Source of the DNA: Haliotis rubra
Lineage: Eukaryota
Length of the DNA: 64,000 bases
NCBI RefSeq assembly: GCF_003918875.1
Contig: NW_025767479.1
Location: 1,736,001-1,800,000 of the forward strand
Direction of reading: 5' to 3'
Shown: one piece after another, positions 2,974-63,660 of the stretch
Layout: each line of letters begins with the position of its first letter
Position numbering within the stretch: the first letter of the stretch is position 1
Translations under genes and position numbers: made by a program
The notes under the pieces: model-generated
The model's input: the letters and a program-made list of their open reading frames with translations, nothing else
Databases searched by the model: none
What the model was told of the DNA's origin: nothing

Positions 2974-5900
2974 TTAATTCCTGATTGAGTTTATCCAGTC
3001 GACATGCTGAGGCACGAAGGCATACACCCCTGGAAAGCCTGGCTTTGCACACCCCTCTGCCACTGACACCACGCCGTACAAAACCCATCTTTCCCCCCAC
3101 CGGGCAAAATAGGGGTCCACCAGAGTCACCCTGAAAAGTAAATTGCTGGTAATAAGGATAATAAGAGATAAACATACTATTTAGTGGGTGAATGGTAAGT
3201 CTTTGCGTTTTCAGTTGAATGTTAATCCATGTTGGTGTGTATTCTTTCATTATTTGAACCCCCCCATCCACTACAGAATCTTAGACCGCCTCCGTGGTGT
3301 AGTGGTTAGAGCGTCCGCCCGGAGAGCGGAAGGTCGCGGGTTCGATCCCCGACCGCGTCATACCAAAAGACGTTAAAATATGGTACTTGTTGGTCCCTGC
3401 CTGGCACTCGGCATTAATGGGTAGAACAAGGACTGGTCGGCTCGGAGTCAGTATAATGTGTCTGAGTGAGGTATTCATGCTTCATTGCGGCATGGTATCT
3501 CAGTGGGCTAGTATTTCATAATGATTCGGGGCGGTGGGGTAGCCTAGTGGTTAAAGCGTTGGCTCGTCACGCCGAAGACACGGGTTCGAATCTCCACATG
3601 GGTACAATGTGTGAAGCCCATTTCTGGTGTCACCCGCCGTGATGTTGCTGGAATATTGCTAAAAGCGGCGTAAAACCAAAACTCAGTCAGTCAGTCATAA
3701 TGATTCATACACACACGCTCTGTCGTCGTATCGCATGGTGACAATCACTGGATTGTCTGGTCCAGATTCTTCGATTATTACAAACAACACCGTACAGCTG
3801 TAATACTGCTGAACAAATACATAGTATAGCTCCTGATATAGTCACAATTGTACAATCGACTCTTCTTTCAGCAGAGATTTCTTATTGATGTGGAAATGGT
3901 TTTGCCGCTTCTATCAACACATCCAATCAGTCATTCTTTCGGGAAGACAAGAGTCATGTTGTGTCAGATAGACCTAAAATTCGTGGTCCATAGTTCTGTC
4001 CTGTTCTGTTCCGTTAAACGTTCAAGGATGCACTGTTATGGGTCTTAACAGAAGAATGTATGAAACCGGACAATCGCAGTGTTACACTCGCTCTTGGGTT
4101 TCCTAAAGACTTCAAATCTAGCTCACTCACTAACTCCCTACTGACCTTGCATGCGTCTACTCCCCCTTCTCTGAAGTACCCAGCACACAGCTGCCTGTTT
4201 GATACCAGTATATAGTCGTTGTCTGCATATGACCTTTGACAAAGGTCAAGGGGGAACAAGGGCACGTATGCCTTCTGTAGAATATCAGGAAATGTGAAAC
4301 CGCCATCTAAAGAAAACAACAACATTCGTATATGATAAAGGGCCACATCATGACACCATTTCGATTATGACAGACAAAATATGACGATCTTCCTTTTTAT
4401 ATTTGGTTGAAGGAGAATGAAATAAAACATCTTAAAAAAATGATGTTGGAAATATATGGAGTAAAATATAAAAGGTTAACGCTAGAGAATAACGAGTCTC
4501 CGGCATCTTCCGAAATATATTTTTAAAAAGCGGAATATTGATGATGATTATATGAATAGATTCCTGAAAATAACTCACAACAACAAGTGTTTGCGAGATG
4601 GGGCAGCATGTTCTGATCTACCAGTGCCTACCTCCGTGGTCATTGTTTCCATTCAAAAGGGAATTATACGTAATACTATCTATTGTTTGTCGCATAGTAA
4701 CTCAGAAATACCCTGCCATGTGATCGGATAATCATTGCGCTTGTACATAGCTGACCTGATTCAAAACTAACACTATTGTCAGTTATTTGAGAGGCATTTT
4801 AGAAGTTGTAAAGGTGAAGGAAACCAAGTTGGATGGTTTTGCTTGACGGTGTTAGTACTTACACCAAAACGCCGCACTCAATGCAATAAAGAACTTCATT
4901 ATCCATACAATTTGGATTTCCTAACACTATTGTGCTGTAGGCGGTGGAAGGGAACATTAAACTGCTCGACAATTAAATGAAACATACATGACAATTTGAT
5001 TTGGGCAAAGATTTATTCAAAGAATAAAGGGAAATCTGAAGTCTCATTGTCTCATTTAAAACAAATGGTCGGTAATGGAGATTTACGCACCCAGGAGCGT
5101 CCCCCATCCAGTGATGAGGCACCCAGAGCCAGCTGTGTAGGAAGTCCCCGGCTCAGGTAGACACACGCTTCTTAAATTTGTACTGGCACTCAGGGGTAAA
5201 TCCTCACTAAGCCTTACAACGGCGATGTCATTGTCCTCTGAACACAAAGAAAAAGAATTGGAATGGAGAAAACCTGAAACGGGGTGAAGAACACAAAATA
5301 AAGGGATGAAGAACACAAAGTAATGAGAAGAAGTAACGGGATTAAGAACACACAAGACATGACGGGATGAAGAACACAAAGTAATGCAAAGAAGTAACGG
5401 GAAGAGGAACACAAGGCATAACGGGATGAAGAACACAAAGTAATGGGAAGCAGTAACGGGACGAGGAACACAACATAATGGGAAGAAGTAACTGGATGAA
5501 GAACACAAAGTAATGGGAGGAAGTGACGGGATGAAGAACACAAGACATGGCGGGATGTAGAACACAAGGTAATGAGAAGAAGTAACGGGATGAAGAACAC
5601 AAAGTAATGGGATGAAGTAACGGGATGAAGAACACAAGACATAACGGTATGAAGAACACAAAGTCATGCGTGGAAGAAACGGGATGAAGAACACTATAAT
5701 GGGAAGAAGTAACGAGATGAAGAACACAAGGCATAACAGGATGAAGAACAAAAGCATAACGAGATGAAGAACACAAAGCAATGGGAAGAAGGGAAGTATG
5801 CTGTTGACGAACCGTAACACAAAATCAGGGCAAATATACAAGTGTAAGTTCCTGCAACGCGAGGTGTGGCTCCTCACGAAACTACGCCACCCGTGCACAA

Positions 5901-6546
5901 CAATCGTATGTAATCACACAAATACGAAAGGATATATGTTCTTTTATGTCTTCGCATGTTTTCTACAGATATGCCAACAGAGCGCAAGCCCATCACTCCG
6001 ACCACTCACTTATGAGAGTAACAGTTCGAATCCAATTCTAGAATTGTTAAATAACAAGAACAAGTTCTATTCATTTCAGTTGTAAAAACGCACTACAAAT
6101 GAATAGTTATATATGTCTGAATATTAATGAGTAATAGAATCGTAATCTTATCCGAATACATATACATCTATGAATGAATAATGTGTACAAAACTGACTGT
6201 TTTGGGAAATGGAAAGTCCGACTTACTGTTAGTTATGTTGTAGAGTGGGTGGGCGTCGATTTTTTCGGCAGTTATATTACTGAGTCTCCTTCTCTGAATG
6301 GAGCCATAACCAACTCTAAGCCTCTCAGGGTTGTCTTTCAGAGATCTGCAAAATACATCCCGTTCATTCAGTGAAAAGCTATTGATGGTACAAAAGGTAT
6401 TTATCCAGTGATATATTTGAAGATTTGAACACGAATTCGACCATCAAAGACGAATTCAACGCATCGGCTTTCTTTTGTATACAACATGCCAGTACTGCAT
6501 TTCCATTGGATATTCATTTCAATTTAGGGCGCGCGCGCGCGCGTGC

Positions 6547-6584
<38 letters not shown>

Positions 6585-9500
6585 GCACAGTGATTAAAGC
6601 GTTCGCTCGTCACGCCGAAGGGACGGGTTCGATTCCCCACATGGGTACAATGTGTGAAGCCCATTTCTGGTGTCCCACGGCGTGATATTGCTGGAATATT
6701 GCTAACAGCGCCCAAAACCATACTCCCTCATTCATTTCAATTTCAGACGTATAACATTTAAACATAATGATTCTCTTTAAAGTTGTGCTGTGCTGTATGA
6801 CGGAACTGAAAATGACTCAATCGATTAATGAATCACGTGCACGTCTCAATTCTCTATATACCAAAACTAAAACTAGATAACGAATATATATACAGACAAA
6901 GCAGTCACAAAATATCCATTGGCCCTACACAATATGATGACGCAGAACATGACGATCACGTTCCTAACACGAGATGCACATCATTAACGACATTCACATA
7001 CCTGCCATGACCGGAAACCCGTCACTAGCACCATTCACGTTACTCACATGATGAGAAACACGTCACTAACGACATTCACACGCACCGCACATGATGAGAA
7101 ACACTTTACTCACGACATTCACATGATGAGAAACACTTTACTCACGACATTCACACGCACCGCACATGATGAGAAACACTTTACTTACGACATTCACACA
7201 CCTCACACAGCAAGATACATTCACGTCACTAACGATATTCACCTACCCTACACAGTGAGAGGCAGTGACGATGTGTCGTTTATCAATGATGGAACCGGCA
7301 CACAATCTTAAGGTAAACCGTTCTTCCAAGTAAACTGTCCAAGGGAACTCCTTTTCTTCGGCATCAATGCCACCCACAACACGAGGCATGGCGTACCGAG
7401 ACGCGTTCCCGGTCTTTGAACTTAGGCCACACGGGGGATCTTGAAAAATAAATAAGTTCTTGCGTGATCACATGTCATGTTTTGTACAGAATATCTATGT
7501 TCTTGTCCCAGTCGGTATCTTAACAACAAAGGTCTTAATGATATTTATATTAATAAAATGTTGGGATCGTGGACAGAGTACCCCTTTTCACAGCCTACCA
7601 AATGAAGACAGAGCTCCGTTCTAGGGGTCAGTCTACCCTGTTGATTTCAAACATTTTTAAAGAGCACCAACAGTTCTTCATCGTACATTGGGATATTCAA
7701 CTAGTTCTAGAAGCTTAAAGTATGGAGCATATCCCTACTACAAGCATTTAAACCTGCTGAACAACGGGGGTGTTTTGAACCGCAAGGATGATTTTTGTTT
7801 GGGAGGAACTGGCGGTATCTGATGCTCATGTATGATGCTCTTACAGAAGTAGTTCATATGCATGCTAAATCATTTTGAATCATTTACATCAACCATGCAG
7901 ATCGGTGTGATCGTTGTTGTTGCACAACTGGCCGTTATCACAATAGGATCGTATAGTACTGACTGACTGACTGACTGAGTTTGGTTTTACGCCGCTTTTA
8001 GCAATATTCCAGCTACATCACGGCGGGGGAACACCAGAAGGATCGTATAGTAAATGTCCCGGAAGGTATGCGTTCGACGTGCTCAAAGGAATACCGCAGG
8101 GAGGTAGATGGGCAATGTTACCCATTGGGGAGATCGAAACATTATGCACTTGGATTTTGAAGACATTTAGTTAAAGGTTATTCTTTCCGGTAAAACTGAA
8201 TTGNNNNNNNNNNNNNNNNNNNNNNNNNNNNNNNNNNNNNNNNNNNNNNNNNNNNNNNNNNNNNNNNNNNNNNNNNNNNNNNNNNNNNNNNNNNNNNNNN
8301 NNNNNNNNNNNNNNNNNNNNNNNNNNNNNNNNNTGGACAACATTTGATGGGATTGCTTAACCAAGTCGTAAAGATAATCAGATGAAATGTTACCCGTTTC
8401 ACGTTTGATGGGATCCTGTGTACACTGGTAATAGTAGAACAGGTAAACACACACCGGGGACATGGTAAAGCAGCTCTGGAAATGGTTACACATAAGAGCT
8501 CGTTCCTGGGCAGCTGGAAGGAAGAATCACTTTGAAATTAAAATTTGACATCAAATGCATAGAAGATGAATTGCGTTTCTTTAATGCTGAACAGATGAAC
8601 TATTGAAACGTTACCATCTTAAAAATAATAAAAAACACGTTCAAACTAAGTCAATGCAAAACACATCGCCCAAACACAACAATAGCTACGTCAAATAATT
8701 TTCGCAGAAAATATACTCTCCCAAAAAAGAAACGCATATAGGAAATTCAACTGTATTTTTATGTTTATTTTGAAACATCTTGTAGGCTTTATGAGTCAAT
8801 GAAATATAGCGAAATTACACACTGGGAATGCAGACGTATCCGTCTTTGGCACTAACTCGAGGAAAGTCAGTTTGAGTGTCACATGGAGACGTGTGGTGGC
8901 GCTGAAGTCAATCCCTCGTGTGACCACCGTGGACATCCAGAACTGCACGGCATCGCCTCGGCATCGAACGAATAAGTCTCAGAATCTCGTGTTGCCCAAT
9001 CGCAGCCCACTCTGCCTGTAGTGCCTGTGCGAGTTGCTGAAGTGTCTGGGGCTGAGGGTTACGGCGTTGCACCCGTCTGTCCGGGGCATCCCACAGATGT
9101 TCGATTGGGTTTAAGTCCGGTGATCTTGAGGGCCAGGGGAGCACATTGATGTTGTGGTTCTGGAGGAAGTCTCTGGTGTGACGTGCTGTGTGGGGCCTGG
9201 CATTGTCCTGTTGAAACAACTCCCTCTGGCGATCAATGATTGGAAGGAGGTGTGGGTGTAGGATTTCGTCACAGTACCGTTGAGCTGTCAGGTTGCCCTG
9301 GATCATCACCAAATCACTTCTCCTACGGCAGGTGATCGCTCCCCACATCATAACACTGTCCAGGCCGAATCTGTCCACCTGGGGAACGCAAGCGTCGGCG
9401 AAACGTTCACGTCGACGTCTGTACATCCGCATTCTTCCATCGCGTCGTTCCAATAGAAATCGCGATTCAACACTGAACCAGATTCTACGCCAATTCGGTA

Positions 9501-12500
9501 GGTTCCAGGCCTGAACGTTGGTGCACCATTGAACTCGATGTCGACGATGTTGTTGTCGAAGCACAGGGCCAAAATAAGGTCTTCTGGCAAGTAAACCAGC
9601 CTCCCTCAACCTGTTTCTGACGGTCTGTGCAGAAAGCCTCCTCAATCCGGGTATTTGTCGAGCGGTACTGGTCGCCGTAGCTGTTCGATGACGCAGGTGA
9701 TGTACCCGGATGTAGCGATCCTGTGCCGCAGTGGTCGCTCGAGGTCGCCCACTACGAGGGACATCTGCTACCGCATTGTGCCGGCGATATCTCTCCCAGA
9801 GCCGTGAAATGGTGCTTTGGTGAACATTCATGCGTGGGGCAACTGCACGTTGAGACTGGCCAGCTTCAAGCAAACCAATGGCGATATGACAGTTGGCTTC
9901 ACTTAGACGTGGCATTTTGCGTTCGTCAACAATATTCCAAATACAGTGAATAATCGACAGACAGCGATCAACCTTTTATACCCATCATTGAGACTATCTG
10001 ATCCCCAACTTTCACGTGCATTGCATGTGAATTGTGTATTCTGTGACCCTACACGCCGAAATTGAAAATCATGCTGTTAAATACGGGTATTTTACGGATG
10101 GTGCGTTTTGTTGTGATGTTTCAAAACATAAACACCATAGGACTCATAAACAGAGCAAAACCTTTTGTAAAATGAATCACGTTTTAATTCATTGCTACAT
10201 AAAATTGCTATTTTCATGATGCGTTTCTTTTTGGGAGAGTATATAAAAAGTGAAACACGAGCCGATTGGGAAGCCAAAACAACACGTGTAATCAGGATAT
10301 ATATTTGATGCAAACAGCAAGTGAAACACTCGCAGTCAGAGATATAACGCAACTGAAATTGATCGCTTGACACCCGAACCACGCAAACGGATCCTGGGTA
10401 TGATACAGATTGGAGCCACCAATGCTGTTCTTATTTGGCTGCTCAATTGTTGCTGTAACTAACCTAATGCAACGTTTCGGACAGACCGGACAGAAATCAG
10501 ACAGGTCAAGAACAGGCAAATCCGGGTAACTACGCCCAATGAAGACCGGTTCCTGCGTCTCGGAATCGATTCCTGGTAGTGATGTCATCCACAAAGGTAT
10601 ATGGTTTGCTGACATGCAGCGGTCATTCGATTACACGTGTTGTTTCGGCTTCCCAATTGGCTAACAGATATTACAGAGGACAGTTATTGACAGCGCAGCA
10701 GAGATTTAAATGAACCTGCACTGTTTGTCGTTGGCACCGACGTGACTGACAGAGGGTCGTCTTTACCGATTTGTCCGTTAAGAGCCGATGAAAGTAAAAA
10801 CTGTTTACGGCCGAAAGGGGGAACCAAAGACGGTATCAGTGTGTAGGGCCGTATGGCGGAACGGAAGTTCTGGTGTGGGGAGGGATGTGTGGGCAAGAGA
10901 GGGAACAGTACTGGAAGGCGTTCCCGAAATTTGACAATGCAGCGATAAATGTATGGCATAAAAATTTATTGTCCAGTTGCCTTGCCATTTCTACAACAGC
11001 TGCCAACATCATAACAACGCCAGGCCCCATACATCCCGGACTTTGCAGAACTTCCCTGAAGCCAACAACGTCCAAGTGTTCCACGCTCCCGAGACCTTTC
11101 CCCCACAGACAACATCTGGGATGTCATGGCTCGTCATGTTTAACAGCAGCCACATCCTAGAGCCAGCCAACAAGAGTGAGTGAGTTGGGTTTTACGCCGC
11201 TTTTAGCAATATTCCAGCAATATCACGGCGGGGGGACACCAGAAATGGGCTTCACACATTGTACCCATGTGGGGAATCGAACCCGGGCTATTTCGTGACG
11301 GTCGAACGCTTTAACCACTAACCTACCCCACCGCCCCTCTACAACATGAATACATGTGATTGTTATGTCACACAATCTTAATTTACTCGTGCTCTCTGTA
11401 AACCCAGCCTTCTGAGAACAATGGCGACGTATCTTACATGACGTCCACAGACAAATGGGTTTCGGCGCGTCTAGTAGCAGGGGATGACGAGAAAAGGGAA
11501 ACCAAAACTTATCAATATGACGTCTCATTGAACTTGAGCGATTTTAGATTTTTGCTTTTGCTATCCTCACCTCAAGTAGGCAACCGTCATGCCAGTATTG
11601 GCTGCTGTATGACGGTCATTTTCTATATATATTTCCATGAAATTTTGATCAATTCAATACATTTTATTTCAGGCATCTATCTTTTGTGGTTTTTACTAAG
11701 ATTAATATAACCCTATAGTAAAGTTTCTTTTAGCCGTCAGTATACATTACAATGTAGGTCAATAACCTTTAGCTGCTACGAGGTAACCTGGTGTACAAAG
11801 CAACCGTTTGTCTAGTCGTTTGTCAGGCTGCAAACCTCCACATGAATACATCAGGTGTGCTCATTTCTAGAGATGTTAGGTGTCAAGACTTTTTAATTAT
11901 CTATTTGAATTAATTTTGAGAGCGTACATACGAACTTTACGGAAGAAAACTCCATACTTTATAGTAAGCAACCTTTTCAATCAAGTTACACCATAAAGTC
12001 ATTTCAGAAATTGCATCTGAACACTGGGAGGGTTTTATTAAATACATGTACGACACATTGTTTGTCAACTTGAACTCATGCTATCCAATTTGTAACATTG
12101 CAGGAACTTACTGACATGAACCTATTGTGAACGTCTAGTGGTACCAGTGGAGGATGGAAAACGTACCCTTTTCATGAATACATGTTGTCATCACTAATTT
12201 GCAGTGATAAATTTATATAATTCTCATCAATACTTCATCTTTTAGTTCGGCAAATATTCAAGACAAGATAGCGTCAACTCAAACTGTCACGAATCGTGTC
12301 ATTAAAATCTGTGAACATACTGCGGAACTGTCTCTGTTCTTTTTCAGAATGCTATCGACGAATGTGATAATTAGACACTACAATGTTACAGTAATTATAA
12401 TGTATAAGGTTGGTAATATGGATTCACGCGTTCCTTTTGGTTCCAGACTGATGGTTTGATAAACCTATATGTTTTAGTCCAAACTACATACTAATATAAA

Positions 12501-13162
12501 GACTAGTCGATTAAAGCATCGCAAGCTTAAGGGTATTGAGACACGTCGTTGTTTTGTCCATATTAAGGACATAAATACAAATATTCCCTCAATAGTGATA
12601 ATGCTATTATGACCATCACGTGCCTTTATATACCTATACTACAGCCTATTAACACTGTACATATACTAGAGATATTGTTCACCTCAGTTAATGAAAAGTC
12701 TGTACAAACAGAATTTGTCAAATATCCATCTACCAGTATCTAATAATTGGGATGTTTACTGATCTGTAATGGTCTAAAATATAATAGACCGGTGAGTATC
12801 AGTGTATGAAGAAAACACAATACCAAACAATTACCAAAATAAAGTGACAAGACCCACATACATCATCCAGATATACTTGGCTACAAATCACCATTTAGCT
12901 ACTATTAATATAGTCATGCACGAAACATCACCATGCTAAAAGGTACTGTAATGTAATGCTGTTGGAAATATATAATTAAAATAGATTAAAATTCATAAGT
13001 ACTTGAAACTGTCTTAAAGAACCTTACAGGGACCTTTGACATATACATCACTTTTTGTATATCCATGGGTTTAAAAAAATAACCATACTCACCTATTTGT
13101 GTAGAAAAACATAGCAATACCAACAAAAGGAGCAGCACTCCTTGTCGTACGCAAGCTGCCAT
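2974..13162 (-). CDS. SP1: secreted trypsin-like serine protease (S1A) with 4-Cys N-terminal module; 7 exons; one +1 frameshift in last exon
   Basis: Exons (minus): 13093-13162 signal [23 protein letters not shown]; 8394-8513 Cys module; 7247-7439 PPCG..AMPR|VVGG..FPW..TASHC; 6227-6345; 5091-5237 DNDIAVV..SVCLP..GWG; 4146-4306 LQKA..LCAG..VDACK; 2974-3130 [24 protein letters not shown]. All GT-AG and phase-compatible. Triad H/D/S and Asp189 present. Extra base in C6 run 3093-3098. Confidence 0.9.
3284..3511 (+). mobile_element. SINE family C (tRNA head plus V-SINE-like central domain), 3'-truncated
   Basis: Near-identical to 23118-23477; gtcataccaaaagacgttaaaatatggtac..cctgcctggc resembles the V domain as I recall it. 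Confidence 0.8.
3528..3694 (+). mobile_element. SINE family A with 12-bp TSD
   Basis: Same consensus; TSD tcataatgattc. Confidence 0.9.
5279..5790. repeat. Minisatellite of mixed about 24/35-bp units (acgggatgaagaacacaa..)
   Basis: Visible tandem array in an SP1 intron; source of the spurious ORFs in 5083-5898. Confidence 0.9.
6581..6735 (+). mobile_element. SINE family A (5' eroded, follows GC/GT microsatellite)
   Basis: Matches family A consensus. Confidence 0.85.
7960..8038 (-). mobile_element. SINE family A, 3' fragment
   Basis: Reverse complement of the tail. Confidence 0.75.
8714..10241 (-). mobile_element. Full-length Tc1/mariner (Tc1, D34E spacing) DNA transposon in SP1 intron 1
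   Basis: TIRs tactctcccaaaaa(a)gaaacgcat at both ends, flanked by TA dinucleotides; single transposase ORF inside. Confidence 0.93.
8908..9915 (-). CDS. Tc1-family transposase, 335 aa, first catalytic Asp mutated to Val
   Basis: Paired-like HTH N-terminus, GRPR motif, WFS(V)[28 protein letters not shown]; 34 residues between second D and E. Confidence 0.93.
   Translation of the reverse strand: MPRLSEANCHIAIGLLEAGQSQRAVAPRMNVHQSTISRLWERYRRHNAVADVPRSGRPRATTAAQDRYIRVHHLRHRTATATSTARQIPGLRRLSAQTVRNRLREAGLLARRPYFGPVLRQQHRRHRVQWCTNVQAWNLPNWRRIWFSVESRFLLERRDGRMRMYRRRRERFADACVPQVDRFGLDSVMMWGAITCRRRSDLVMIQGNLTAQRYCDEILHPHLLPIIDRQRELFQQDNARPHTARHTRDFLQNHNINVLPWPSRSPDLNPIEHLWDAPDRRVQRRNPQPQTLQQLAQALQAEWAAIGQHEILRLIRSMPRRCRAVLDVHGGHTRD
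10244..11170 (+). mobile_element. Decayed Tc1-like transposase relic
   Basis: Broken frames read [78 protein letters not shown]. Confidence 0.8.
11176..11337 (-). mobile_element. SINE family A
   Basis: Reverse complement of the consensus. Confidence 0.9.
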
Positions 13163-16538: not shown

Positions 16539-16576
16539 CATGGTGCTTATGTGTTTCATTACAGCATTTCGAATCG

Positions 16577-41515: not shown

Positions 41516-41521
41516 TATAAG
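41516..41521 (+). promoter_or_regulatory. Candidate TATA box of SP5
   Basis: TATAAG 180 bp upstream of the ATG at 41696; motif only. Confidence 0.3.
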
Positions 41522-41695
41522 GAGGAGCCGCTGTGTTGTCTTGTATCATCCCAATGGGGGTCAACATAGGAAATAGTTGTAATTCTTGTACGCGTATTTA
41601 AGTAACGTTATGAGGGAACACCAGCCTTTGATGCGCCATTCTTGTCTCGTATACTATTACGGAAGATGAGAAGAGGAATCAACATAACGGGTAAA

Positions 41696-47600: not shown

Positions 47601-47911
47601 CCATTTCCGGTGTCTCTGCCGTGATATTACTGGAATATTGCTAAAAGTGGCGTAAAACCATACTCACTCATTTGTGCATGGCGATAGTCAAGAAAATGTT
47701 TCCAACCGATCCACAAAAGATACTTCTTTTTCAGACTGATTCCGGAGGTCCTCTGATTTGCGACTATAATGACCGATGGACTCTGATTGGAGTTGTGTCA
47801 AGTGGTGTTGGATGTGCTAGGCCCATGCTTCCTGGAAAATATACAAGGGTGTCAAAATATATCTCTTGGATTAACTATGTAACATCAGTGAGGAAACCAT
47901 ATCACTACTGA
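41696..47911 (+). CDS. SP5: secreted trypsin-like serine protease (S1A) with 6-Cys N-terminal module; 7 exons, intact; Y|IVGG and TDSGG
   Basis: Exons: 41696-41762 [22 protein letters not shown]; 42917-43000 Cys module; 43327-43510 IQCG..ISTY|IVGG..SAAHC; 44761-44870; 45377-45517 VNDIAIL..PICLP..GWG; 47273-47415 ..KDSCN; 47735-47911 [13 protein letters not shown]..; AATAAA at 47938-47943. Confidence 0.92.
43772..44445. repeat. 71-bp tandem repeat in an SP5 intron
   Basis: taaactgtttgaatcacaaagctacctcgatcttacaaatattc.. with period 71, about 9 copies. Confidence 0.93.
45658..46701 (-). mobile_element. 5'-truncated non-LTR retrotransposon (LINE ORF2 C-terminus, RTE-X-like) with 20-bp TSD
   Basis: ORF 45730-46134 [28 protein letters not shown] (CCHC zinc motif); AATAAA plus A-rich tail; TSD atgtcatcgaaatccctatt at 45638-45657 and 46702-46721. 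Confidence 0.85.
46728..46890 (+). mobile_element. SINE family A nested in a family B element, 12-bp TSD
   Basis: TSD cctattgc(t/g)tag at 46716-46727 and 46891-46902. Confidence 0.9.
47514..47671 (+). mobile_element. SINE family A
   Basis: Matches consensus; last intron of SP5. Confidence 0.88.
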
Positions 47912-48012
47912 AGAAACGGACAGTGCTTGAATAATAGAATAAACATTTGCAATACCATTTTTATAAATGTTTATATTGCATTTTTTGTCACTATATGCCT
48001 TAAGCCATACCC

Positions 48013-51729: not shown

Positions 51730-54700
51730 ATGAGTTGGTGTGAGGGGAATAGCGTCTGGAGTCTCTGGTGGCGAATTAGTGTGTTTGCTCTGTGTTTCCT
51801 GACGCTGGTGAGATGCAGCCACGGTCAAAAAAGTAAGTGTGAGCAAGATCTTGTCAAATATTTGACAAGTTTTCTGAAAAATAAATGTGTCAGGTAAGTT
51901 TAAACCACGGTTAACCCTTGAACGGTATAACTTACCTTGCTACATTCATGTTACTAATGTTTCAATAACATCAAACAAGTCAGTTGCATACTAATCTAAA
52001 GAAATTACTATGGAACGCATGATATTAATTACAGTAATATTAACGAATTAGATCCTTAGATTCTTTGGAGCAGTTTGATATTGCTGGATCGTGTGGTTAA
52101 TCAGTGGAAAACATGTGAGAATGTATCATGATTGATTGTTTGTTGTTTTACGCCGCACTCAGCAATATTCCAGCTATATGGCGGTCGTCTGTAAATAATC
52201 GAGTCTGGACCAGACAATCCAGTGATCAACATCATGAACATCAATCTACGCAATTGGGATACGCTGACATATGCCAATCAAGTCAGCGAGCCTGACCACC
52301 CGATCCCGTTAGGCGCCTCTTACGACAATCATGCAGAAGATCATTTCTAACCCGGATCTTCACGGGTCGTAAATGTACAGTATCAATTAATTTAATTGAT
52401 AATAGAGCAGATAGTTTACATAATGTAGCGCGTGTCTTTACTTAATATGACTTGTGGCTTTACATAATGTAACGCGTGTGTTTACTTAATATGACTTGTG
52501 GCTTTACATAATGTGACACGTGTCTTTACTTAATATGACTTGTGACTTTACATAATGTAACGCGTGTCTTTACCTAATATGACTTGTGGCTTTACATAAT
52601 GTGACACGTGTCTTTACTTAATATGACTTGTGGCTTTACATAATGTGACGCATGTCTTTACTTAATATGATCTGTGGCTTTACATAATGTGACGCATGTC
52701 TTTACCTAACATAACACGTATCGTTACTCAATATAATTCAATATCCTTACTGAATATGTCTATATTTAATATGACGTGGTGCCGTTTGCTTTTCCACATT
52801 ATGACCTGTACGTAGAGTTTTCACACGGTACTTGCTGGACTATGTGATGTGTAAGGGCCAGTTGATACAGATAGAGCAGAACAGGCATAACCTTTTCGAG
52901 AGCACCTGCTGACATCACCATGTTTCAGTGACTCACTAGTAAAATTTATATCGTATTATTTGACTAAACATTGTCATTTAGAAAGTGGTCAAATATAACA
53001 TATGTTAAGTTTTGTAATACCAGTGGAAGCTGCATTGGCTGAGTGGGTTAGACGGCTGACTGTGTGTGCTGGAGATTAGGTGCCTGAGTCTGCAGGCGTG
53101 GGTTCGAATCCCGGATGGGACCCAGCCAAACAAAAGTACCAAAACCTGCACTTTACTGAGAAAGTGTAATCCCACATATAGCATGTTTTACGTTGCATCA
53201 CTTGTTTCAATTTTACCTTCTACCTTGTAGATATCAGTGTTCTTTCTTATTTGGCATCTTAAGAAATACCGTTCGTTTAATGGGCATTTAGGCTCAATTG
53301 GTAACCCTATCAAATCAACCTCAAACAACGCTTGCCTGGTCTGCCAGCTCAAATCTCACAGAGATATCACGGGATGTATTACACTGTTCAGAGCTTTTCA
53401 TAAATTTGCACCATGCTGTGGGGCCAGATCCCCTGCGATTAATATTATATTTATTTACAAAAGCACATAGATTTCTCAGTAAGATTTGTTTTATGGGGAA
53501 GTTACATCTCTTATTTGTACATTTTCGTGACCCAGACAGATGTGGAGAGCACTGTCCGTACTTCCGCCAGTGTTTCCCTACGTCACAGGTGTGCCGGCTA
53601 CTGTACAGATACTGTCAATGTGGACCTCTACCTGACGGTAAAAACTGAAATTCTACGTATACTTGTATCTGTTTATGACCCGTGAAGATCCGGGTTGGAA
53701 TTGATCTTCTGCAATTGGTCTTCATTAACCCATGCTTGTCGTAAGAGGCGACTAATGGGATCAGGGGTCAGGCTCGATGACTTGGATGACACATGTCATC
53801 GTATCCCACATGCGAAGATCGATGCTCATGATGTTGATCACTGGATTGTCTGGTCCAGACTCGATTATTTACAGACCGCCGCCATATAGCTGGAATATTG
53901 CTGAGTGCGGAGTAAAACTAAACTCACTCATTCACTGTATCTATTTATAAGTTGCTATGTAGACCTGTTTATCGTTGATGCAAGATGCTTAATGTTTAGT
54001 TATATCCCAAATGAATTTATTGTTATGTCTGATGCCAGTTGAAAAATGGAAACATATATATGATCTCCTTTACGTTAAAGACAGGAGTTTTAATTTACTT
54101 TGTAATTACAGCTGCAATTATTTTCACATAAGGACAAAGAAATCAAATTAATTTAAAAAGACCCAAAAGAAACAATAACAAAAAGATACGACGTGACATT
54201 AATCTGAAAGGAACACACGACGTGACATAATGCTGAAGTTTCGACTTTTCCTTAAATTAATTTAATGAGACGAATGTTTACTTTGTGTTTTATTAGTCAT
54301 TTGATACCTCGATTAAATACATTTTTCAGAGTATACAAAATAGTTCAACAATTACTACATGTAAGTTTGCATATAAATCATGAAACGTGTACATGAAATT
54401 ATCAATATATGTGTGCACAGAAGGCTCCAAATTAGGAATTATTATGAATTTTTTACGAGATAAATTATGTGCAACAAAATCTCTCTAATCCCGACAGTCG
54501 TCTTCCCAGTGAAATGATCTGTATTAAAAATGTTCGGATGATGAATTTTGTGTTTATGTTGTTGTTACAAACAGTAACATACTAAGCTAGTGATTTCCAG
54601 ATTAACGGGGCTACAGTGAAACTTCAATCAATACTTTGTCTCACAGTTTATTTGTACGTGCACTGAATATTGAAAGAATTTAATTTTTAGCATCTTGCGT

Positions 54701-57193
54701 GTTTTCTACGGAAGCTTAGTAGGGTCACGGTGAAAAAAAGAACAATTTGGTCTCACTATCTCTTAAGTGGACTTAATATCTCCTACGTAGGACATAATAA
54801 CACCAACGTAGGAGGTTGTACGTCCTACGTAGGACATCGTATCTCCTACGCAGGAGATAATGAGACTAAAAACATTCACCGTGGCCCTACTACGCTTCCG
54901 TAGTTTTCCATTAATGATAAAACAGTATGATCTGTACGTATTTGTTCATCGTTCATCTAATGCAGTATAACTCAGATCGTTGTGTAATAAACTTCATTAA
55001 TTTGGCTATTTGTTCTAGACTGTGGTGTGAGCCAAGTAACCGGCCCCGCCCAGAGTTACGTGGCATCCAGTCGTATTGTAGGAGGGGAGGCGTCGGCGGA
55101 TTGTCAATTCCCGTGGATGGCTGTAGTAGGAACCCGAAGCAGCCTCTGCGGTGGCAGCATCATCGACGAAACACACGTCCTCACTGCTGCCCACTGCGTC
55201 GTGTAAGTGGTGTGTATTGTGAGTGAGTGAAGTTTTACGTCGTTTTACCGATGCTACAGGCACACAAGCGATAAACTTCCCCCACTGTACTAATTCTTTT
55301 TTTTTTCGCTTTTTGGGGCGAGCAAACGCTTTGACGCAATTTCACTATAGACATGCACAATATTAAATTAAATTTAATAAAAATTAAAACGTCATAATGA
55401 AGTATATTCAGGAATTTCCAAATCGCCATGGAGGAAGAGTCCAAACGTATGAATGTCGTTTTGTTTGTTTTGCTTACTGGGATGGTTAGTTTTCTGGACA
55501 TCTGACGTACCTCTCGCTCGATGACAATGCCTCATCTCGGTTAAACTCCGTGTTTAGAAATGTAATAGTCATGTGCCTCTGTGTTTTAGAAGACGTAATG
55601 TTGTGGTCAACCCAAGACTATTAAGAATAGGAGTTGGATCTACCCGTCGGAACAGAGCTACGATGCTTCGAGTGTCTCAAGTCACGGTCCATCCTCAGTA
55701 TAGAAGCAACCGTTTCTGTAAGTAATGAGATTAAACCCCATATGTCTGCCTAATGTGGAGTTTAATAATGAGGAATATCACCCAGGAGAAAATAAGACAT
55801 TGGTACCAATGTATATATTCCTATCTATTTCAGCTGACGACGTTGCAGTCATTACACTGAGCAGGAGGTTGAGATGGTCACAGTGCGTTCGCCCTATCTG
55901 CGTCCCCAATGAAACCGACACTGCTATGGTTGGAGAAATATGTGTAGCCGCAGGTTGGGGACTTACAAATGGTAAATATTATATGTACAGATATTTAAAA
56001 ACTTCTTACGATCTCAACAACCACTGAACACATAACAACTAAAGCTTTATCCAAACGCGAACCAATCGCATTCTCGCGGTTAGTCGCTCGAGATCCCGCC
56101 GCGAATCGAATGGGAACCGAACCCGTCCAATCGCAACGAATCGAATGGGAACCGAACCCGTCCGGGTTTGATCGCAAAAAGATGCGGCTAAAGGGTACAA
56201 AAGCCGGAGTCAGTATAAGGGAAAGTGAGGTGTTAAGTCTAATGTCGTTTGAAGAATCGCTTTGATAATTCTGCCAAAATGCCTGTTAAAAGTCCTCCAT
56301 CGCTTTATTTTCTCCGTTATTTTCAGAGCAAAATTCGCGGGCAGAGAATGTTCTCCGTAGCGTCAAAGTGCCGATAGTGAGCAGTGCTAATTGCAGAAGG
56401 ATATATGGATCTCGAAGCTTTGACGCAAACAACATTTGTGCGGGCGACCTTAGATATGGAGGAAGAGACTCTTGTCGGGTACAAAATATGTTTCAATATT
56501 TAGTTGTGAATATGAAACCTTGTATTAAAATCTTTATCAATATGTAATAATGAATATGAAATTTTGTAATAAAATTTGTTTTAATATGTAACAATCAAAA
56601 TGAAACATTCTACTAAAATAGCTTCAATATTTAATTATGAATATGAAACCTTGTATTAAAAGCTTTTTCAAAATGTAATAATTAATATGAAACCTTGTAC
56701 AAAATGTGTTTCAATATGTAACTATGAATATAAAACCCTGATACATATATCGAAAAAGACTTTGAGAAAGCATGGATATGTGAGTGAGTTAAAGAGAATT
56801 TGATTTATATCATGGCTCTCTGTACCAAACTGCGCATTACACACCTCGTGGAATCAATGTAAAATAGCACACGGGGATATGAAGATGGTTCACAATTATT
56901 TTACGTTGCACCAATTCGCTTGTGAAGCAGCAATCATTCTCCATCTGAAAGATATGGGTGACGCTGAAGCGAGTGTAATAAAACATGAAACTAATTAAGT
57001 TACATAACATATATTTTGTTTTTAATGTATTCTATAGGGAGACTCTGGAGGCCCTCTGATGTGCAGTTCCGGCACCCACTGGAAAGTCATGGGCATCGTT
57101 TCTTTCGGGAGAGGGTGTGGACGGCGAAGGGCACCGGGTGTCTACGCCTTTGTGCCTCCCTATGTCTCATGGATAAATAGCGTGAGGTCCTGA
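51730..57193 (+). CDS. SP6: secreted, Arg-rich trypsin-like serine protease (S1A) with 6-Cys N-terminal module; 7 exons, intact
   Basis: Exons: 51730-51832 MSWCEGNSVWSLWWRISVFALCFLTLVRCSHGQK; 53536-53637 Cys module; 55019-55202 CG..ASSR|IVGG..TAAHC; 55590-55717; 55834-55971 DDVAVI..PICVP..GWG; 56327-56478 ..RDSCR; 57038-57193 [21 protein letters not shown]. Confidence 0.93.
52131..52368 (-). mobile_element. SINE-like family B
   Basis: Reverse complement of the consensus, (aaac)n tail. Confidence 0.88.
52414..52710. repeat. 44-bp tandem repeat
   Basis: ctttacataatgtgacacgtgtctttacttaatatgacttgtgg, about 7 copies. Confidence 0.92.
52972..53190 (+). mobile_element. Repeat family D with inverted tail fragment
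   Basis: Homologous to 14167-14365. Confidence 0.7.
53677..53935 (+). mobile_element. SINE-like family B
   Basis: Full-length copy with (ctca)n tail. Confidence 0.88.
54707..54902. mobile_element. MITE with TACGG termini and 6-bp TSD (IS3EU-like non-autonomous element)
   Basis: TIRs tacggaagc(t/g)tagtaggg(t/c)cacggtgaa; TSD GTTTTC at 54701-54706 and 54903-54908; internal tcctacgtagga palindromes. Confidence 0.8.
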
Positions 57194-58170: not shown

Positions 58171-58883
58171 CAAAGTTTTGTAGGCCCCGGAAATGTAACG
58201 ACAATTTATAGTTCATTGATCATAAAATGTAATGTCTATCGTTCATATTTCTCTAAGCATAGAAAATGTAGTGAAATGATTCATAGTTAATTAAGAATAT
58301 AAAATGTAAAGACACTGGTTCATAGTTAATTAAGTACTGCAAATGTAATCACACTAGCTCATATGCAATAACACCTAACCAATGTTCATGAGGCATAGCA
58401 AATTCACTGATCCAAGCACAGACAATGCAATAAGGTTCATAGGGTCATTAGGTGTAGGAAAGTAGATGACGATGGCCAATAGAGTATTAGGCATAGAAAA
58501 TCAATTTACATCTCAGTAATAGATTACTGACCTCGGAATACTGCTCGTAGTAATATCTTAAGAATGATACCACAGTTGTGTATACTTTCATAATATGTAA
58601 CTATGCATATCATTATACTTATATTATTTTCGAATAAAAGGTCTGACAAACAATTTGTTTACGTATTTGTGATTCTATTTTACACTACACTACAGCTATA
58701 GTCACAAGAGTGAGTGACACCAACGTATCATACCAACAGCAAAGTCAAACTGTCACAAACGGATCTTCATGTTTGATGACACTTATGACTAGCATGATGA
58801 GTTGGGTTGGAGAGTCTCAGGAATAGCTTGCAAGTCGTCTAAGGCGACAGAAGGTGGCTGTGCAGAGTTGTTGCCCTTACCGG

Positions 58884-60441: not shown

Positions 60442-60448
60442 TATAAAA
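60442..60448 (+). promoter_or_regulatory. Candidate TATA box of SP7
   Basis: TATAAAA 45 bp upstream of the ATG at 60487. Confidence 0.5.
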
Positions 60449-60486
60449 GAGCTTAGTCATACAATTAACCTTTGAGCAAGACCATC

Positions 60487-63400
60487 ATGGTGGCACTTAG
60501 GCTGTTGACGTTAGGACTAGTTCTTGTTTCTCAGACGGTCGCCCAATTTTTCATTCCCAATTTCGGTAGGTTTCATTTGTTTATTTTCTTTAAAAACCCG
60601 TGATATTAATGACAATTGTTCCAGCTGCCATGAAGACGCAGGTCAAAAGTTCAACTTGTAATGACCATTGCCTGTTTAGTGTAGAACGCACACACCAATA
60701 TTCCAGCTACATGTAACATTATTTAATAATTGAGATATTGGTTACATCATGAGCAACGATCTACACAATTGCGAAACGATGATATTTGTCAACCTTTTCA
60801 GTGAACCTGACCACTTGATGTCGGTAGTCGCCTCATGTGACACGCAAAGACTGCTGATAATCAATTCTCATAATGAGTAGTTAATATCTGTCTGTCTGTA
60901 TGCCTGTCTATGTGAGTTTGAATGATTCAGAATCAATCAATTTGATCCAACCATCCAATGTTTATAAAAGGTGAGACTTTATGGATGTCAACTTCTTTGT
61001 TATTATGAGGAACTTTTTATTGTGAGGAACATGACGTTTCGTAAATTCAAAGACTTGTTTTCGAGCTAAATTTGTCGAAATCCATACGTTCTCCTAATAA
61101 GAACTTGATCTAATGCTGATCAAGTGATTGGATTGGGTGTTTTAGCGGGGTACATCTCGGCTAGCGTAAAAAGAAGATCATACTAGTTGTTGCAAATGTA
61201 GGGAAACCAATATGGTGCAGACAAACCGAGAATAATTTGAAGATGAGATTCGAACCCAGGAACATAGGATTACTATGTTACTCTATGACAAGGGTAGTAT
61301 TGACCCCATTTGTAAAACCATGTATATGTATCGCCCTCTGTTTCCGATCCAGTTTTTATCATCAGCGTTTTAATTCTTCCAGGCGCTTTCACCTGCGGAT
61401 GGAAATATGGTGGACAATGCAAGCGATTCTGTGACAGCAGAGACTACGTCCTAGGCCGAAAACCATGTGACGGATCTGGTACCTGCTGTGCTCGTTCTCT
61501 ACGTAAGAAATACTAACATCTTACCCATATGCAGAGTTGATCTAATTTCTCTTTAGAAAGTGGTCAAATGTAACAGATATTGTATTTGGGATCGCTATTT
61601 TTCAGTAAAGTACAGATTCTTGCGCTTTTGTTGGGTTGAGTCCCTTCCGGGATTCGAACCCCTACTCTCAGAGTCAGTCACCTAATAGCCAGCACTCAAG
61701 AATCCCAGAAGGGATTCAGCCAAAGTACTACAATCTGTGCTTTACTGAGAAAGTAGAATCTCAAATATAGCATCTGCTATTTTAATTTCTTTTAAGCCAT
61801 CAGTCCTTGTGGGTGTTCTTGATGAGAACATATACCATTCCTGATTAGATATGAGATATGATTGCCCTGAGATGAACACGAGCGTCACAAATACAATGGT
61901 AAAACTTGTTTACTGTATGTCACTTATAAGACAAAATAATCTGTTTATGTTACTATTTGATTCGTTACTATGTAAATCTGCATACTTCTCAAACATTCTT
62001 GGCTTCGGTACAAACAAAAACTGCTGTATAGTTGCCTATCTCTGATCAGATTCCAACACTAGCTGCATTATCTTACCAACAAAGATCCCCCTGATTTTAC
62101 TCAAACTACATGCATAGTGAGTGGATAGATATAGTTATACGTAGTTATTACAATACAAAAACAGCAAAGATAATACAAGAAACGATCCTACATTGCAGTC
62201 AGATAGGAACCGAACCAAATCGACACCTGTCAACTACATTTTTGCATGCCTATATTATATTCTGATGTTTTAATAACATTGCGAATTGATAAATACAAGA
62301 AACAAATTTACTGAAGGATCAATAAGATGTTTGTTCTTGTAGCCTGCTCTTCATATGGCGGAGTGTGTCGCTTGGATGGATGTGTCAGTAACTTTGAGGT
62401 GCATCTTCAGTTCAACGTTCGATGCCGGTTCGGAGGAGCGTGTTGTGTGAGGCGTTGGAAAAGGCCACTGACGCAGACCACAACGACCACAACTACTACG
62501 AGTCCCGTGCCGGCTGGTTCGTTGCTAGTTGATAATAATAATTATAATCTCCAACTAGTTTTCAACTATTTTATAAGATATACACAATGGGAGAAATATG
62601 AGCACCCTCGATCCTGAAGATCGAAGCAAACAAAGAAATTGTGTGTCATTATCAAATATCCTTATCCTTATAATTAGAATGAAGAATGAAAGCGGTATCA
62701 ACATTAAGCACCCAACTGCCATGTATCGTGTACTTCAAATATTGTTTTCTTGTTCAACGCTGGTTTCAGCTATATGACGGGGATCTGTAAGTAATCGAGT
62801 CTGGACCAGACAATCCAGTGATTAACATCATGAGCATCGTTCCACGCAATGGAGATGCGACATGTGTCAACCATGTGTCCAATTCTAACTCGGATCTTCG
62901 CGGGTTCATACTTTAAGGAAAATATCACTGCAGACGACATTTCTACGGTCATGCGTTCTCAGTATGAATTTGTTTTTGAAACTGAAGCAATATCTCTGTC
63001 TTTGCTTTTACTTAAATATTTCGTTTGCACGATATTCATACACTTTCTCTCCATGATGTCATGACGTCACAAACTTATGAACGTTGAAACAAGAATACAT
63101 CTGTTTTACTCGGAGACAGTTTAGTTTAAAATCCTAACCCTCGACATGCTAACAACAGTGATTAGATGCTCCTAGACTTTCTCTGATTCTTTATTATTCT
63201 TGAATTCGTTTAATGTGTGCGAGGCGGTGGGTTAGCCCAGTCTCGCCGAAGACCCAAGTTCGATTCCCCACATGAGTACAATGTGTGAAGCCCATTTCTG
63301 GTGTCCCCCACCGTGATATATTGCGAAAAGCGGCGTAAAGCCCAACTCACTCGCTCACTTTAATTTGTGTAATGATAATTCCCAAGGCAGAAACTCAAGA

Positions 63401-63660
63401 TATTCGTTTAATTTATTTACACATTGTGTTTGCTGTGATTCATGGACGGTACATAGTGTTTTTGCAGCATGTGCTTCACGACCCAGATTTAATCCTGTAA
63501 CTGGTCGTATCTTGGGTGGTATGTCCGTGAGCTCATCGTGTCAGTGGCCCTGGATGGTGTCTATCAAGCTAGGAACAACCTCCAACATTGGCTCCCATGT
63601 GTGTGCTGGAGTGCTCGTCAACCCTAACAAGGTCCTCACCACATCCAGCTGTGTGCTCGG
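60487..63660 (+). CDS. SP7 (5' partial): secreted protein with two beta-defensin-like domains, Thr-rich linker and non-catalytic serine-protease homolog domain (His57 to Ser)
   Basis: Exons: 60487-60565 MVALRLLTLGLVLVSQTVAQFFIPNF; 61383-61502 six-Cys domain ending CC; 62343-62516 six-Cys domain ending CC plus T8 linker; 63468-63660 CASRP..TGR|ILGG..CQWPW..VCAG..VLTTSSCVL. Phases 1/1/1/2 as in paralogs. Continues beyond the window. Confidence 0.87.
61383..61502 (+). other. SP7 exon 2: beta-defensin/big-defensin-like domain 1
   Basis: AFTCGWKYGGQCKRFCDSRDYVLGRKPCDGSGTCCARSL = C-x7-C-x3-C-x11-C-x5-CC with a G-x-C motif; ttccag/gtaaga splice sites. Confidence 0.75.
61552..61780 (-). mobile_element. 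Repeat family D, inverted pair
   Basis: Minus copy 61552-61695 followed by a plus-strand partial copy. Confidence 0.65.
62343..62516 (+). other. SP7 exon 3: beta-defensin/big-defensin-like domain 2 plus Thr-rich linker
   Basis: CSSYGGVCRLDGCVSNFEVHLQFNVRCRFGGACCVRRWKRPLTQTTTTTTTTSPVPA = C-x6-C-x4-C-x13-C-x5-CC. Confidence 0.75.
62745..62906 (-). mobile_element. SINE-like family B (internally deleted)
   Basis: Reverse complement of the consensus. Confidence 0.75.
63221..63358 (+). mobile_element. SINE family A (internal deletions)
   Basis: Matches consensus. Confidence 0.8.

What the first reader, a model, noticed from the sequence alone, without database searches (positions are those of the whole stretch)
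2974..63660. Seven-gene protease / pseudo-protease cluster that may encode a self-contained extracellular cascade
Seen: five zymogens with an intact triad and Asp189 (trypsin-like specificity) plus two likely non-catalytic members (SP4, SP7). Activation P1 residues differ: R (SP1, 3, 6, 7), K (SP2), Y (SP5), none (SP4). All share intron phases 1,1,2,1,1,0, and the N-terminal modules sit in swappable 1-1 exons (micro-domain versus two defensin-like domains). Known: clustered active proteases plus SPH cofactors with disulfide-knotted N-terminal domains run arthropod prophenoloxidase/Toll and horseshoe-crab clotting cascades. Inference: a convergent immune, clotting or mucus cascade built by tandem duplication and exon shuffling. 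The trypsin-like members could cleave each other's R/K sites.
Basis: inference. Interest (0 to 1): 0.75.

Follow-up and report, generated by a model that had tools for sequence, protein, structure and literature searches.

The report
Abalone tandem serine protease gene cluster
This stretch of blacklip abalone DNA holds seven neighbouring genes for trypsin-type secreted proteases, two of them probably inactive, but nothing shows that they activate one another in a cascade.

Summary
The window holds six complete S1A (trypsin-fold) genes and the first four exons of a seventh: SP1-3 on the minus strand, SP4-7 on the plus strand. The intron phases (1,1,2,1,1,0), the activation P1 residues (R, K, R, none, Y, R, R), Asp189 in five members and the phase 1-1 N-terminal module exons all check out.

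- SP1, SP3 and SP4 each carry a +1 frameshift as assembled.
- SP3's first exon runs into a gap.
- SP7 continues beyond the window, so only its His57-to-Ser change is visible.
- SP4 keeps all three triad residues.

I could test only the SP4 frameshift. It is absent from read contigs of three abalone sources and from two orthologues, so it is an assembly error. The genome is Haliotis rubra, assembled from Nanopore reads.

SP1-SP5 lie in the same order in other abalones. SP1-SP4 evolve under purifying selection (dN/dS 0.19-0.34). The N-terminal micro-domain has no Pfam family and is predicted to be a helical hairpin, not a clip domain.

Tandem duplication and exon shuffling are supported. The cascade is untested: no RNA data were available, R/K sites are generic, and SP5's Tyr site has no matching activator in the cluster. 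The scan holds separate notes on SP4 and SP7 in this window.

The parts
2974..13162 (-). SP1. Exons: 13162-13093, 8513-8394, 7439-7247, 6345-6227, 5237-5091, 4306-4146, 3130-2974. Activation site R|VVGG; triad and Asp189 present. One extra base in the G6 run near 3096-3101 shifts the frame in exon 7.
   Evidence: Orthologues P0106 (84% identical) and P0151 (92%) are intact, 322 and 323 aa.
17044..22302 (-). SP2, an intact 316-aa zymogen. Exons: 22302-22236, 21738-21640, 20706-20505, 19751-19633, 19051-18905, 18165-18008, 17202-17044. Activation site K|IVGG.
   Evidence: Orthologues P0154 (82%, P1 = R) and P0269 (87%, P1 = K).
24454..30363 (-). SP3. Exon 1 starts at 30363 and runs into the gap at 30306. 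Other exons: 29884-29765, 28549-28354, 26885-26767, 25864-25717, 25147-24987, 24609-24454. One extra base near 25828 breaks the frame in exon 5 (25864-25717). Activation site R|VVGG.
   Evidence: The database protein P0089 is this gene with exon 5 skipped. Orthologues P0152 and P0153 are intact.
32620..38903 (+). SP4, a protease homologue without the activation switch. Exons: 32620-32689, 33693-33840, 34638-34777, 37650-37779, 38339-38490, 38757-38903. No module exon was found. It has no cleavage site, reads D-N-S-G-A-P and has Ser189; His57, Asp102 and Ser195 are kept. The window has one extra A at 37743.
   Evidence: Contigs of three sources leave out the base at 37743. These features are conserved in H. 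rufescens and H. asinina. dN/dS is 0.32-0.33.
41696..47911 (+). SP5, an intact zymogen with Tyr at P1 and T-D-S-G-G-P (Thr193). Exons: 41696-41762, 42917-43000, 43327-43510, 44761-44870, 45377-45517, 47273-47415, 47735-47911. Exon 3 (43327-43510) has an alternative acceptor at 43315.
   Evidence: The record's own product P0278 (315 aa) matches apart from an upstream ATG at 41666 and the 43315 acceptor.
51730..57193 (+). SP6, an intact 320-aa zymogen with a six-Cys micro-domain. Exons: 51730-51832, 53536-53637, 55019-55202, 55590-55717, 55834-55971, 56327-56478, 57038-57193. Activation site R|IVGG.
   Evidence: It is not among the genes called in the public record.
60487..63660 (+). SP7, 5' part only. 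Exon 1 is 60487-60565. Two six-Cys exons with a beta-defensin-type array lie at 61383-61502 and 62343-62516. Exon 3 is 63468-63660, with R|ILGG and His57 replaced by Ser. The rest lies beyond the window.
   Evidence: There is no significant Pfam or PDB hit for the six-Cys exons, and the fold model has low confidence.
53536..53637 (+). The micro-domain exon, shown here in SP6. The equivalents are 42917-43000 (SP5), 8513-8394 (SP1), 21738-21640 (SP2) and 29884-29765 (SP3). Four Cys are invariant; SP5 and SP6 have one further pair.
   Evidence: Alignment A4. AlphaFold2 model: pLDDT 86.6, helices at residues 2-12 and 17-25. No Pfam family, including CLIP. No Foldseek match.

Best explanation
This is a tandem-duplicated family of secreted S1A (chymotrypsin-fold) serine protease genes, found so far only in abalone (Haliotis). 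It was read here in the Haliotis rubra assembly.

Inferred from the sequence: each typical member has a signal peptide, a small disulfide-stapled helical-hairpin module encoded by one phase 1-1 exon, and a linker with a Cys. By analogy with chymotrypsinogen, that Cys should pair with Cys122 and keep the pro-piece attached. An activation site and a trypsin-like catalytic domain with Asp189 follow.

Activation should work as in any S1 zymogen. Cleavage after Arg/Lys (Tyr in SP5) frees the Ile/Val16 amino terminus, which pairs with Asp194.

Two members have left this scheme.
- SP4 lost the module exon, the cleavage site, Gly193 and Asp194, yet is kept under purifying selection.
- SP7 swapped the module for two six-Cys exons and lost His57.
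Both are most likely non-enzymatic binding proteins.

The three frameshifts are most likely Nanopore-type indel errors of the assembly. This is shown for SP4 and inferred for SP1 and SP3.

The family arose by local duplication before the abalone species split, with exon loss and gain at phase-1 introns. Whether members activate each other is unknown. The default reading is independent or commonly triggered zymogens, not a closed cascade.
For: - Pfam Trypsin hits on every exon set, and on the orthologues at 181-202 bits.
- One shared exon plan and set of phases.
- Residue-level features from the alignments.
- Micro-domain homology with four invariant Cys across five paralogues and five orthologues, and a confident two-helix model.
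- Among the listed hits of one word-based search, full-length matches come only from Haliotis. The next hits cover the catalytic domain only, at about 42% identity.
- Gene order SP4 | SP3 SP2 SP1 in H. rufescens and SP5 SP4 | SP3 in H. asinina.
- dN/dS of 0.19-0.34 for SP1-SP4.
- The tree puts SP1-3 in one clade at 99 SH-aLRT, with orthologues paired. The whole cluster sits on one side of a branch.
- The SP4 extra base is absent from contigs of organism A and two related organisms and from both orthologous loci.
- The assembly method was Nanopore, Racon and one Pilon round, merged with a hybrid assembly (PMC6774278).
Against: - No expression data: no RNA run held the 10-kb stretch tested, and SP6 is not a called gene in the public record.
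- The SP1 and SP3 frameshifts were not tested against reads and could be real recent pseudogenisations in H. rubra.
- Monophyly of the whole cluster has weak support (SH-aLRT 47).
- SP6 and SP7 orthologues were not retrieved, so their conservation is unknown.
- The Cys-Cys122 tether, secretion and disulfide pattern are read from sequence only.
- SP7's Asp102 and Ser195 lie outside the window.
Confidence: 0.72

Rival explanations
1. Self-contained extracellular cascade. The trypsin-like members cleave each other's R/K sites in sequence. SP4 and SP7 act as non-catalytic cofactors, as clip-SPHs do in arthropod prophenoloxidase and Toll cascades.
For: - Five Asp189 zymogens sit next to two homologues with a disabled catalytic apparatus.
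- The pro-pieces are probably tethered, as in regulatory proteases.
- SP7 keeps a cleavage site although His57 is lost, as cleaved SPH cofactors do.
- The cluster is conserved across abalones and under purifying selection.
Against: - No clip domain.
- R/K P1 is generic for S1 zymogens.
- SP5's Tyr P1 has no matching chymotrypsin-like activator in the cluster.
- No initiator with a recognition domain and no terminal substrate lie in the window.
- No RNA evidence of co-expression.
- Physical clustering follows from tandem duplication alone.
Confidence: 0.08
2. A loose activation network of the kallikrein-locus type. The members are co-expressed in one fluid or tissue, and some auto- or cross-activate, without a fixed order and with outside activators as well.
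For: - The layout matches the human KLK locus: tandem S1 genes, one exon plan, mostly R/K pro-peptide sites with an odd one out.
- KLK papers describe a KLK 'activome' network.
Against: Nothing here tests it. There are no expression or biochemical data. KLKs have short free pro-peptides, whereas these carry a probably tethered module.
Confidence: 0.18
3. A partly decaying cluster. SP1 and SP3 are real pseudogenes in H. rubra, and perhaps SP6 is silent, so the functional set is smaller than seven.
For: - +1 frameshifts in the assembly.
- The record's SP3 product skips exon 5.
- SP6 is not called as a gene.
Against: - The one frameshift that could be tested is an artefact.
- The SP1 shift lies in a G6 homopolymer run and the SP3 one in a short C run of a Nanopore-based assembly.
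- Sequence downstream of each shift still matches the intact orthologues closely, and dN/dS is 0.19-0.34.
Confidence: 0.2

Closest known systems
Arthropod CLIP-domain serine protease / SPH cascades (prophenoloxidase, Toll) and the horseshoe-crab clotting enzymes
   Same: Secreted S1A zymogens with a small disulfide-bonded N-terminal module, a linker Cys that can tether the pro-piece, R/K activation sites, and catalytically disabled homologues encoded beside active ones.
   Different: The module is not a clip domain: no PF12032 hit, 4-6 Cys in about 28 residues, and a predicted two-helix hairpin. The SPH-like members differ from clip-SPHs: SP7 has His57 replaced by Ser and six-Cys modules, and SP4 has no cleavage site at all. 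No cascade order, recognition component or substrate is known.
Human kallikrein-related peptidase (KLK) locus
   Same: A contiguous tandem array of S1 genes with one conserved exon/phase plan and mostly R/K pro-peptide sites. A proposed cross-activation network shows that the idea is not new.
   Different: KLKs have short free pro-peptides and no N-terminal module or pseudo-protease members of this kind. The abalone genes are unrelated beyond family S1A.
Automatic annotations of the same genes in public abalone records ('trypsin-1-like', 'trypsin Blo t 3-like', 'serine protease 27-like', 'plasma kallikrein-like', 'tryptase-2-like')
   Same: These are the orthologues, or the very products, of SP1, SP2, SP3 and SP5.
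   Different: The names come from similarity of the catalytic domain only. The micro-domain, the cluster and the SP4/SP7 peculiarities are not described. I found no paper on them.
Big defensin / beta-defensin domain
   Same: Both SP7 module exons carry a six-Cys array ending in CC, with spacing in the beta-defensin range. Each follows a phase-1 intron, as big-defensin and beta-defensin domain exons do. Abalones have big defensins (PMC7203481).
   Different: No significant sequence hit (best is beta-defensin 104 at E = 1) and no Pfam hit. The fold model is unreliable (pLDDT 58.8). Here the exons are internal and fused to a protease homologue.

Membership tests
Peptidase family S1A (chymotrypsin fold, PF00089) | Significant match to the trypsin domain profile above its curated cut-off | tested here: met
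   Single exons score 20.8-50 bits against a cut-off of 20.6. Full-length orthologues score 181-202 bits.
Peptidase family S1A (chymotrypsin fold, PF00089) | Catalytic triad His57, Asp102, Ser195 | tested here: met
   Present in SP1, 2, 3, 5, 6 and also SP4. SP7 has Ser at position 57, and its other two positions lie outside the window.
Peptidase family S1A (chymotrypsin fold, PF00089) | Zymogen activation site before I/V-V/L-G-G, with Asp194 as partner | tested here: met
   Met in six of seven genes. Not met in SP4, which has no site and has Asn194.
CLIP-domain serine proteases and clip-SPHs | N-terminal clip domain (PF12032; six Cys, three disulfides; by my knowledge 37-55 residues and a mixed beta fold) | tested here: not met
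   No Pfam hit even at E <= 10 for five module exons. There are 4-6 Cys in about 28 residues. The AlphaFold2 model is two helices, pLDDT 86.6.
CLIP-domain serine proteases and clip-SPHs | Sequential proteolytic activation among members | not testable with these tools
   This needs recombinant zymogens. Only site sequences are available.
Big defensin / beta-defensin domain (SP7 modules) | Six-Cys array C-x(4-8)-C-x(3-5)-C-x(9-13)-C-x(4-7)-CC (consensus from my own knowledge) | tested here: met
   Exon 61383-61502 reads C-x7-C-x3-C-x11-C-x5-CC. Exon 62343-62516 reads C-x6-C-x4-C-x13-C-x5-CC.
Big defensin / beta-defensin domain (SP7 modules) | Sequence or fold similarity to known defensins | tested here: inconclusive
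   No defensin family among the Pfam hits (the only weak hit is DSL, below its cut-off). The best PDB hit is beta-defensin 104 at E = 1. AlphaFold2 pLDDT is 58.8.
Big defensin / beta-defensin domain (SP7 modules) | Phase-1 intron directly before the Cys-rich domain exon | tested here: met
   Both exons are entered in phase 1. The rule is stated in PMC7203481.
Kallikrein-type tandem locus with an activation network | Tandem paralogues with one exon/phase plan | tested here: met
Kallikrein-type tandem locus with an activation network | Co-expression and demonstrated cross-activation | not testable with these tools

The most novel reading that the evidence does not exclude
The cluster encodes an abalone-specific extracellular proteolytic system. 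The switch-less SP4 and the defensin-tagged dead protease SP7 would serve as recognition or cofactor subunits for the trypsin-like members. That would be a convergent counterpart of arthropod clip/SPH cascades, built on a different (helical hairpin) pro-domain.
Probability: 0.08. Interest if true: 0.75.

Novelty: new variant of a known kind. Interest (0 to 1): 0.33.

Why it matters
If the ordinary reading holds, this is one more lineage-specific expansion of trypsin-like proteases, useful mainly for correcting the abalone annotation. In the public record one product skips an exon, one is truncated and one gene is not called, and the first two follow from assembly indels.

Three details go beyond routine:
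- a small helical, disulfide-stapled pro-domain, found so far only in abalone and belonging to no described family;
- a protease homologue (SP4) that kept its triad but lost the whole zymogen switch, and has been conserved since the abalone species split;
- a dead protease fused to two defensin-like modules (SP7).

These are good material for studying how pseudo-proteases and pro-domains are recruited. Molluscan humoral protease cascades are poorly known. A real cascade here would matter for invertebrate immunity and abalone aquaculture, but that remains conjecture.

Tried and rejected
- I considered clip-domain membership and rejected it: no Pfam hit and a helical model.
- The Foldseek search of the 33-residue micro-domain model found nothing. 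I did not run the wide structural search, because a two-helix hairpin would match many folds non-specifically.
- The fold test of the defensin-like exon failed for lack of depth: two sequences, pLDDT 58.8.
- I looked for a phase 1-1 Cys-rich exon between SP4 exons 1 and 3 and found none. The H. rufescens and H. asinina SP4 products are 288 and 281 aa against 262 in my model. That difference is unresolved.
- I tried bypassing the three frameshifts by alternative splicing. Only SP4 has a weak alternative donor (37766). It would delete a conserved strand, and the read evidence makes it unnecessary.
- The profile search of the representative library was swamped by multi-domain polyserases. Only P0089 and P0106 were useful.
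- Two alignment-based word searches for SP6 and SP7 orthologues returned none. They also missed rows of their own query, so this absence means nothing.
- A first fragment alignment (A6) was misaligned and I discarded it.
- Literature searches for these abalone genes, or for a mollusc clip cascade, found nothing specific.
Full report
WHAT IS THERE

Six-frame motif scans and all-against-all comparison of stop-to-stop ORFs found seven copies of the His57 exon of a trypsin-fold domain. They also found matching copies of the four later catalytic-domain exons for six of them. Every piece tested hits Pfam Trypsin.

I built exon models from splice sites, reading frame and similarity to the most compact gene, SP6. 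I then added the first two exons of each gene. SP1-3 lie on the minus strand and SP4-7 on the plus strand. SP3 and SP4 are head to head, about 2.3 kb apart.

The intron phases are 1,1,2,1,1,0 in SP1, SP2, SP5 and SP6. SP3 has the same exon lengths apart from one extra base. SP4 lacks exon 2 and has phases 1,2,1,1,0.

I made joined exon models only by coordinates inside scripts. I used them for bookkeeping and for local comparison with fetched loci. No joined model was handed to any database search. Those searches were done exon by exon by reference, or with database proteins.

RESIDUE-LEVEL CHECK

Activation sites:

| Gene | Site |
|---|---|
| SP1 | R\|VVGG |
| SP2 | K\|IVGG |
| SP3 | R\|VVGG |
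| SP4 | none |
| SP5 | Y\|IVGG |
| SP6 | R\|IVGG |
| SP7 | R\|ILGG |

- His57, Asp102, Ser195 and Asp189 are present in SP1, 2, 3, 5 and 6.
- SP5 has Thr at 193 and SP1 has Ala at 216.
- SP4 keeps His57, Asp102 and Ser195, but reads D193-N194, has Ser189, and lacks about 19 residues that hold the cleavage site in the others.
- SP7 has TTSSC in place of TAAHC.
- All members have a Cys in the linker and a Cys at the position of Cys122. By analogy with chymotrypsinogen and the regulatory S1 proteases, the pro-piece should therefore stay attached. This is an inference from sequence.

As assembled, three genes are out of frame by one extra base:
- SP1 exon 7, in a G6 run;
- SP3 exon 5;
- SP4 exon 5, in an A5G3 run.

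SP3's first exon runs into the gap at 30306. SP7 stops at the end of exon 3 because the window ends, so 'non-catalytic' rests on His57 alone.

The other four gaps lie in introns or between genes. Exon phases match across them. Orthologue proteins are colinear across the SP1 and SP3 junctions, and the SP4 junction matches the orthologous exons in the loci of the other two species. I filled no gap. A database protein returned by a search (P0089) spans SP3 exon 1, and I did not use it for that purpose.

ARE THE FRAMESHIFTS REAL?

The single reads call covered 37600-43550. Contigs of organism A leave out one letter at 37743, the SP4 site. So do contigs of two related organisms, which differ from the window at roughly 3.5% and 6.5% of positions. 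The orthologous exons of H. rufescens and H. asinina are also in frame there. So that shift is an error or rare allele of the assembly.

Database names identify the genome as Haliotis rubra. Its published assembly merges a Nanopore assembly, polished with Racon and one Pilon round, with a hybrid assembly (PMC6774278). Residual indels are therefore expected. The window differs from organism A's own contigs by about one indel per kilobase.

I could not test the SP1 and SP3 shifts. Three things point to artefacts:
- their orthologues are intact;
- the sequence after each shift still matches the orthologues closely;
- both are +1 events, the SP1 one in a G6 run and the SP3 one in a short C run.

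I put artefact at about 75-80%. The public annotation shows the consequences. The SP3 product skips exon 5, and the SP4 product is cut to 200 aa.

RELATIVES AND CONSERVATION

Among the hits listed for the word-based search with P0106, full-length relatives that include the N-terminal module come only from Haliotis. The next hits cover the catalytic domain alone at about 42% identity.

| Gene | Orthologues (identity) |
|---|---|
| SP1 | P0106 (84%), P0151 (92%) |
| SP2 | P0154 (82%), P0269 (87%) |
| SP3 | P0153 (78%), P0152 (80%) |
| SP5 | P0278, H. rubra's own product |

- Gene order is kept: SP4 | SP3 SP2 SP1 in H. rufescens and SP5 SP4 | SP3 in H. asinina.
- SP4's peculiarities are conserved in both species.
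- Nei-Gojobori dN/dS between H. rubra and the other two species is 0.19-0.34 for SP1-SP4. The values are approximate, because a few intronic residues entered the alignments.
- A quick maximum-likelihood tree puts SP1-3 in one clade (SH-aLRT 99), with orthologues paired. The duplications therefore predate the species split.
- The whole cluster falls on one side of a branch, but weakly (47). SP4 sits on a long branch next to SP6.
- I did not retrieve SP6 and SP7 orthologues. The searches used also missed rows of their own query, so this says nothing.

THE MODULES

The micro-domain exon has four invariant Cys in ten homologues, with one extra pair in SP5 and SP6. It has no Pfam family, CLIP included. 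AlphaFold2 predicts two helices with pLDDT 86.6. Foldseek found no match. It is therefore not a clip domain.

The two SP7 exons carry a six-Cys array of beta-defensin type. Each follows a phase-1 intron, which is the arrangement described for big defensins, and abalones possess big defensins (PMC7203481). Sequence and fold evidence are insignificant or unreliable.

All module exons are symmetric phase 1-1. SP4 shows loss of one without a break in frame. Exon shuffling is therefore well supported.

FUNCTION

The mechanism of each typical member follows from established S1 zymogen chemistry. The cascade idea adds that the members act on each other.

Evidence consistent with it:
- active and disabled members lie side by side;
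- the pro-pieces are probably tethered;
- SP7 retains a cleavage site;
- the cluster is conserved.

Evidence against a self-contained system:
- there is no clip domain;
- R/K sites are generic;
- SP5 needs cleavage after Tyr, and every member with intact machinery has Asp189;
- no initiator and no substrate gene lie in the window;
- physical clustering follows from duplication alone.

No RNA run held the tested stretch, so co-expression is open. The human kallikrein locus shows that tandem S1 genes can form a loose activation network. I rate such a network at about 0.18 and a closed cascade at about 0.08.

VERDICT

This is a real, conserved family of S1A proteases, found so far only in abalone, with an undescribed helical pro-domain and two pseudo-protease members. 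The evolutionary reading is supported and the cascade is unsupported.

I found no paper on these genes. The scan's earlier notes on SP4 and SP7 in this window agree with what I see.

Noticed in passing
window 8908-9915 (-): An intact 335-aa Tc1/mariner-type transposase ORF (DDE_3 plus HTH_Tnp_Tc3_2) lies inside SP1 intron 1, which is 4.6 kb long.
   Followed up: partly
window about 37900-38080 and 38532-38619: A very high-copy repeat with a tRNA-like end (loose ends read ...GGTTCGATTCCC). Summed word depth is 1e5-1e7 in all four DNA runs. It is probably a tRNA-derived SINE in SP4 introns.
   Followed up: no
window 47971-49560 (-): A 529-aa Thr/Pro/Gln-rich ORF is produced by a 24-nt minisatellite (48023-49393, 58 copies). 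The public record calls a 320-aa gene without any Pfam family here.
   Followed up: partly
window 51730-57193 (+): SP6 has an intact seven-exon model but is not among the genes called in the public H. rubra record. It is either unannotated or lacks transcript support.
   Followed up: partly
window 24454-30363 and 32620-38903: The public products of SP3 (273 aa, exon 5 skipped) and SP4 (200 aa, truncated) appear to be distorted by single-base indels of the assembly.
   Followed up: yes
window 43315 / 43327: SP5 exon 3 has two acceptors 12 nt apart. The record's 'isoform X1' uses 43315 and adds four residues between the micro-domain and the linker.
   Followed up: partly
window 378-1276, 15616-16548, 43834-44306, 52415-52709, 57386-58185: Several long minisatellites (periods 34, 35, 71, 44 and 78 nt) lie in introns and between genes of the cluster.
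   Followed up: no
L003 1-2509 (-): In H. asinina the gene next to the SP4 orthologue is recorded as a 510-aa product without Pfam hits. Yet exons 1 and 2 of an SP5 orthologue lie there at 1303-1235 and about 296-189. The gene model may be wrong.
   Followed up: partly
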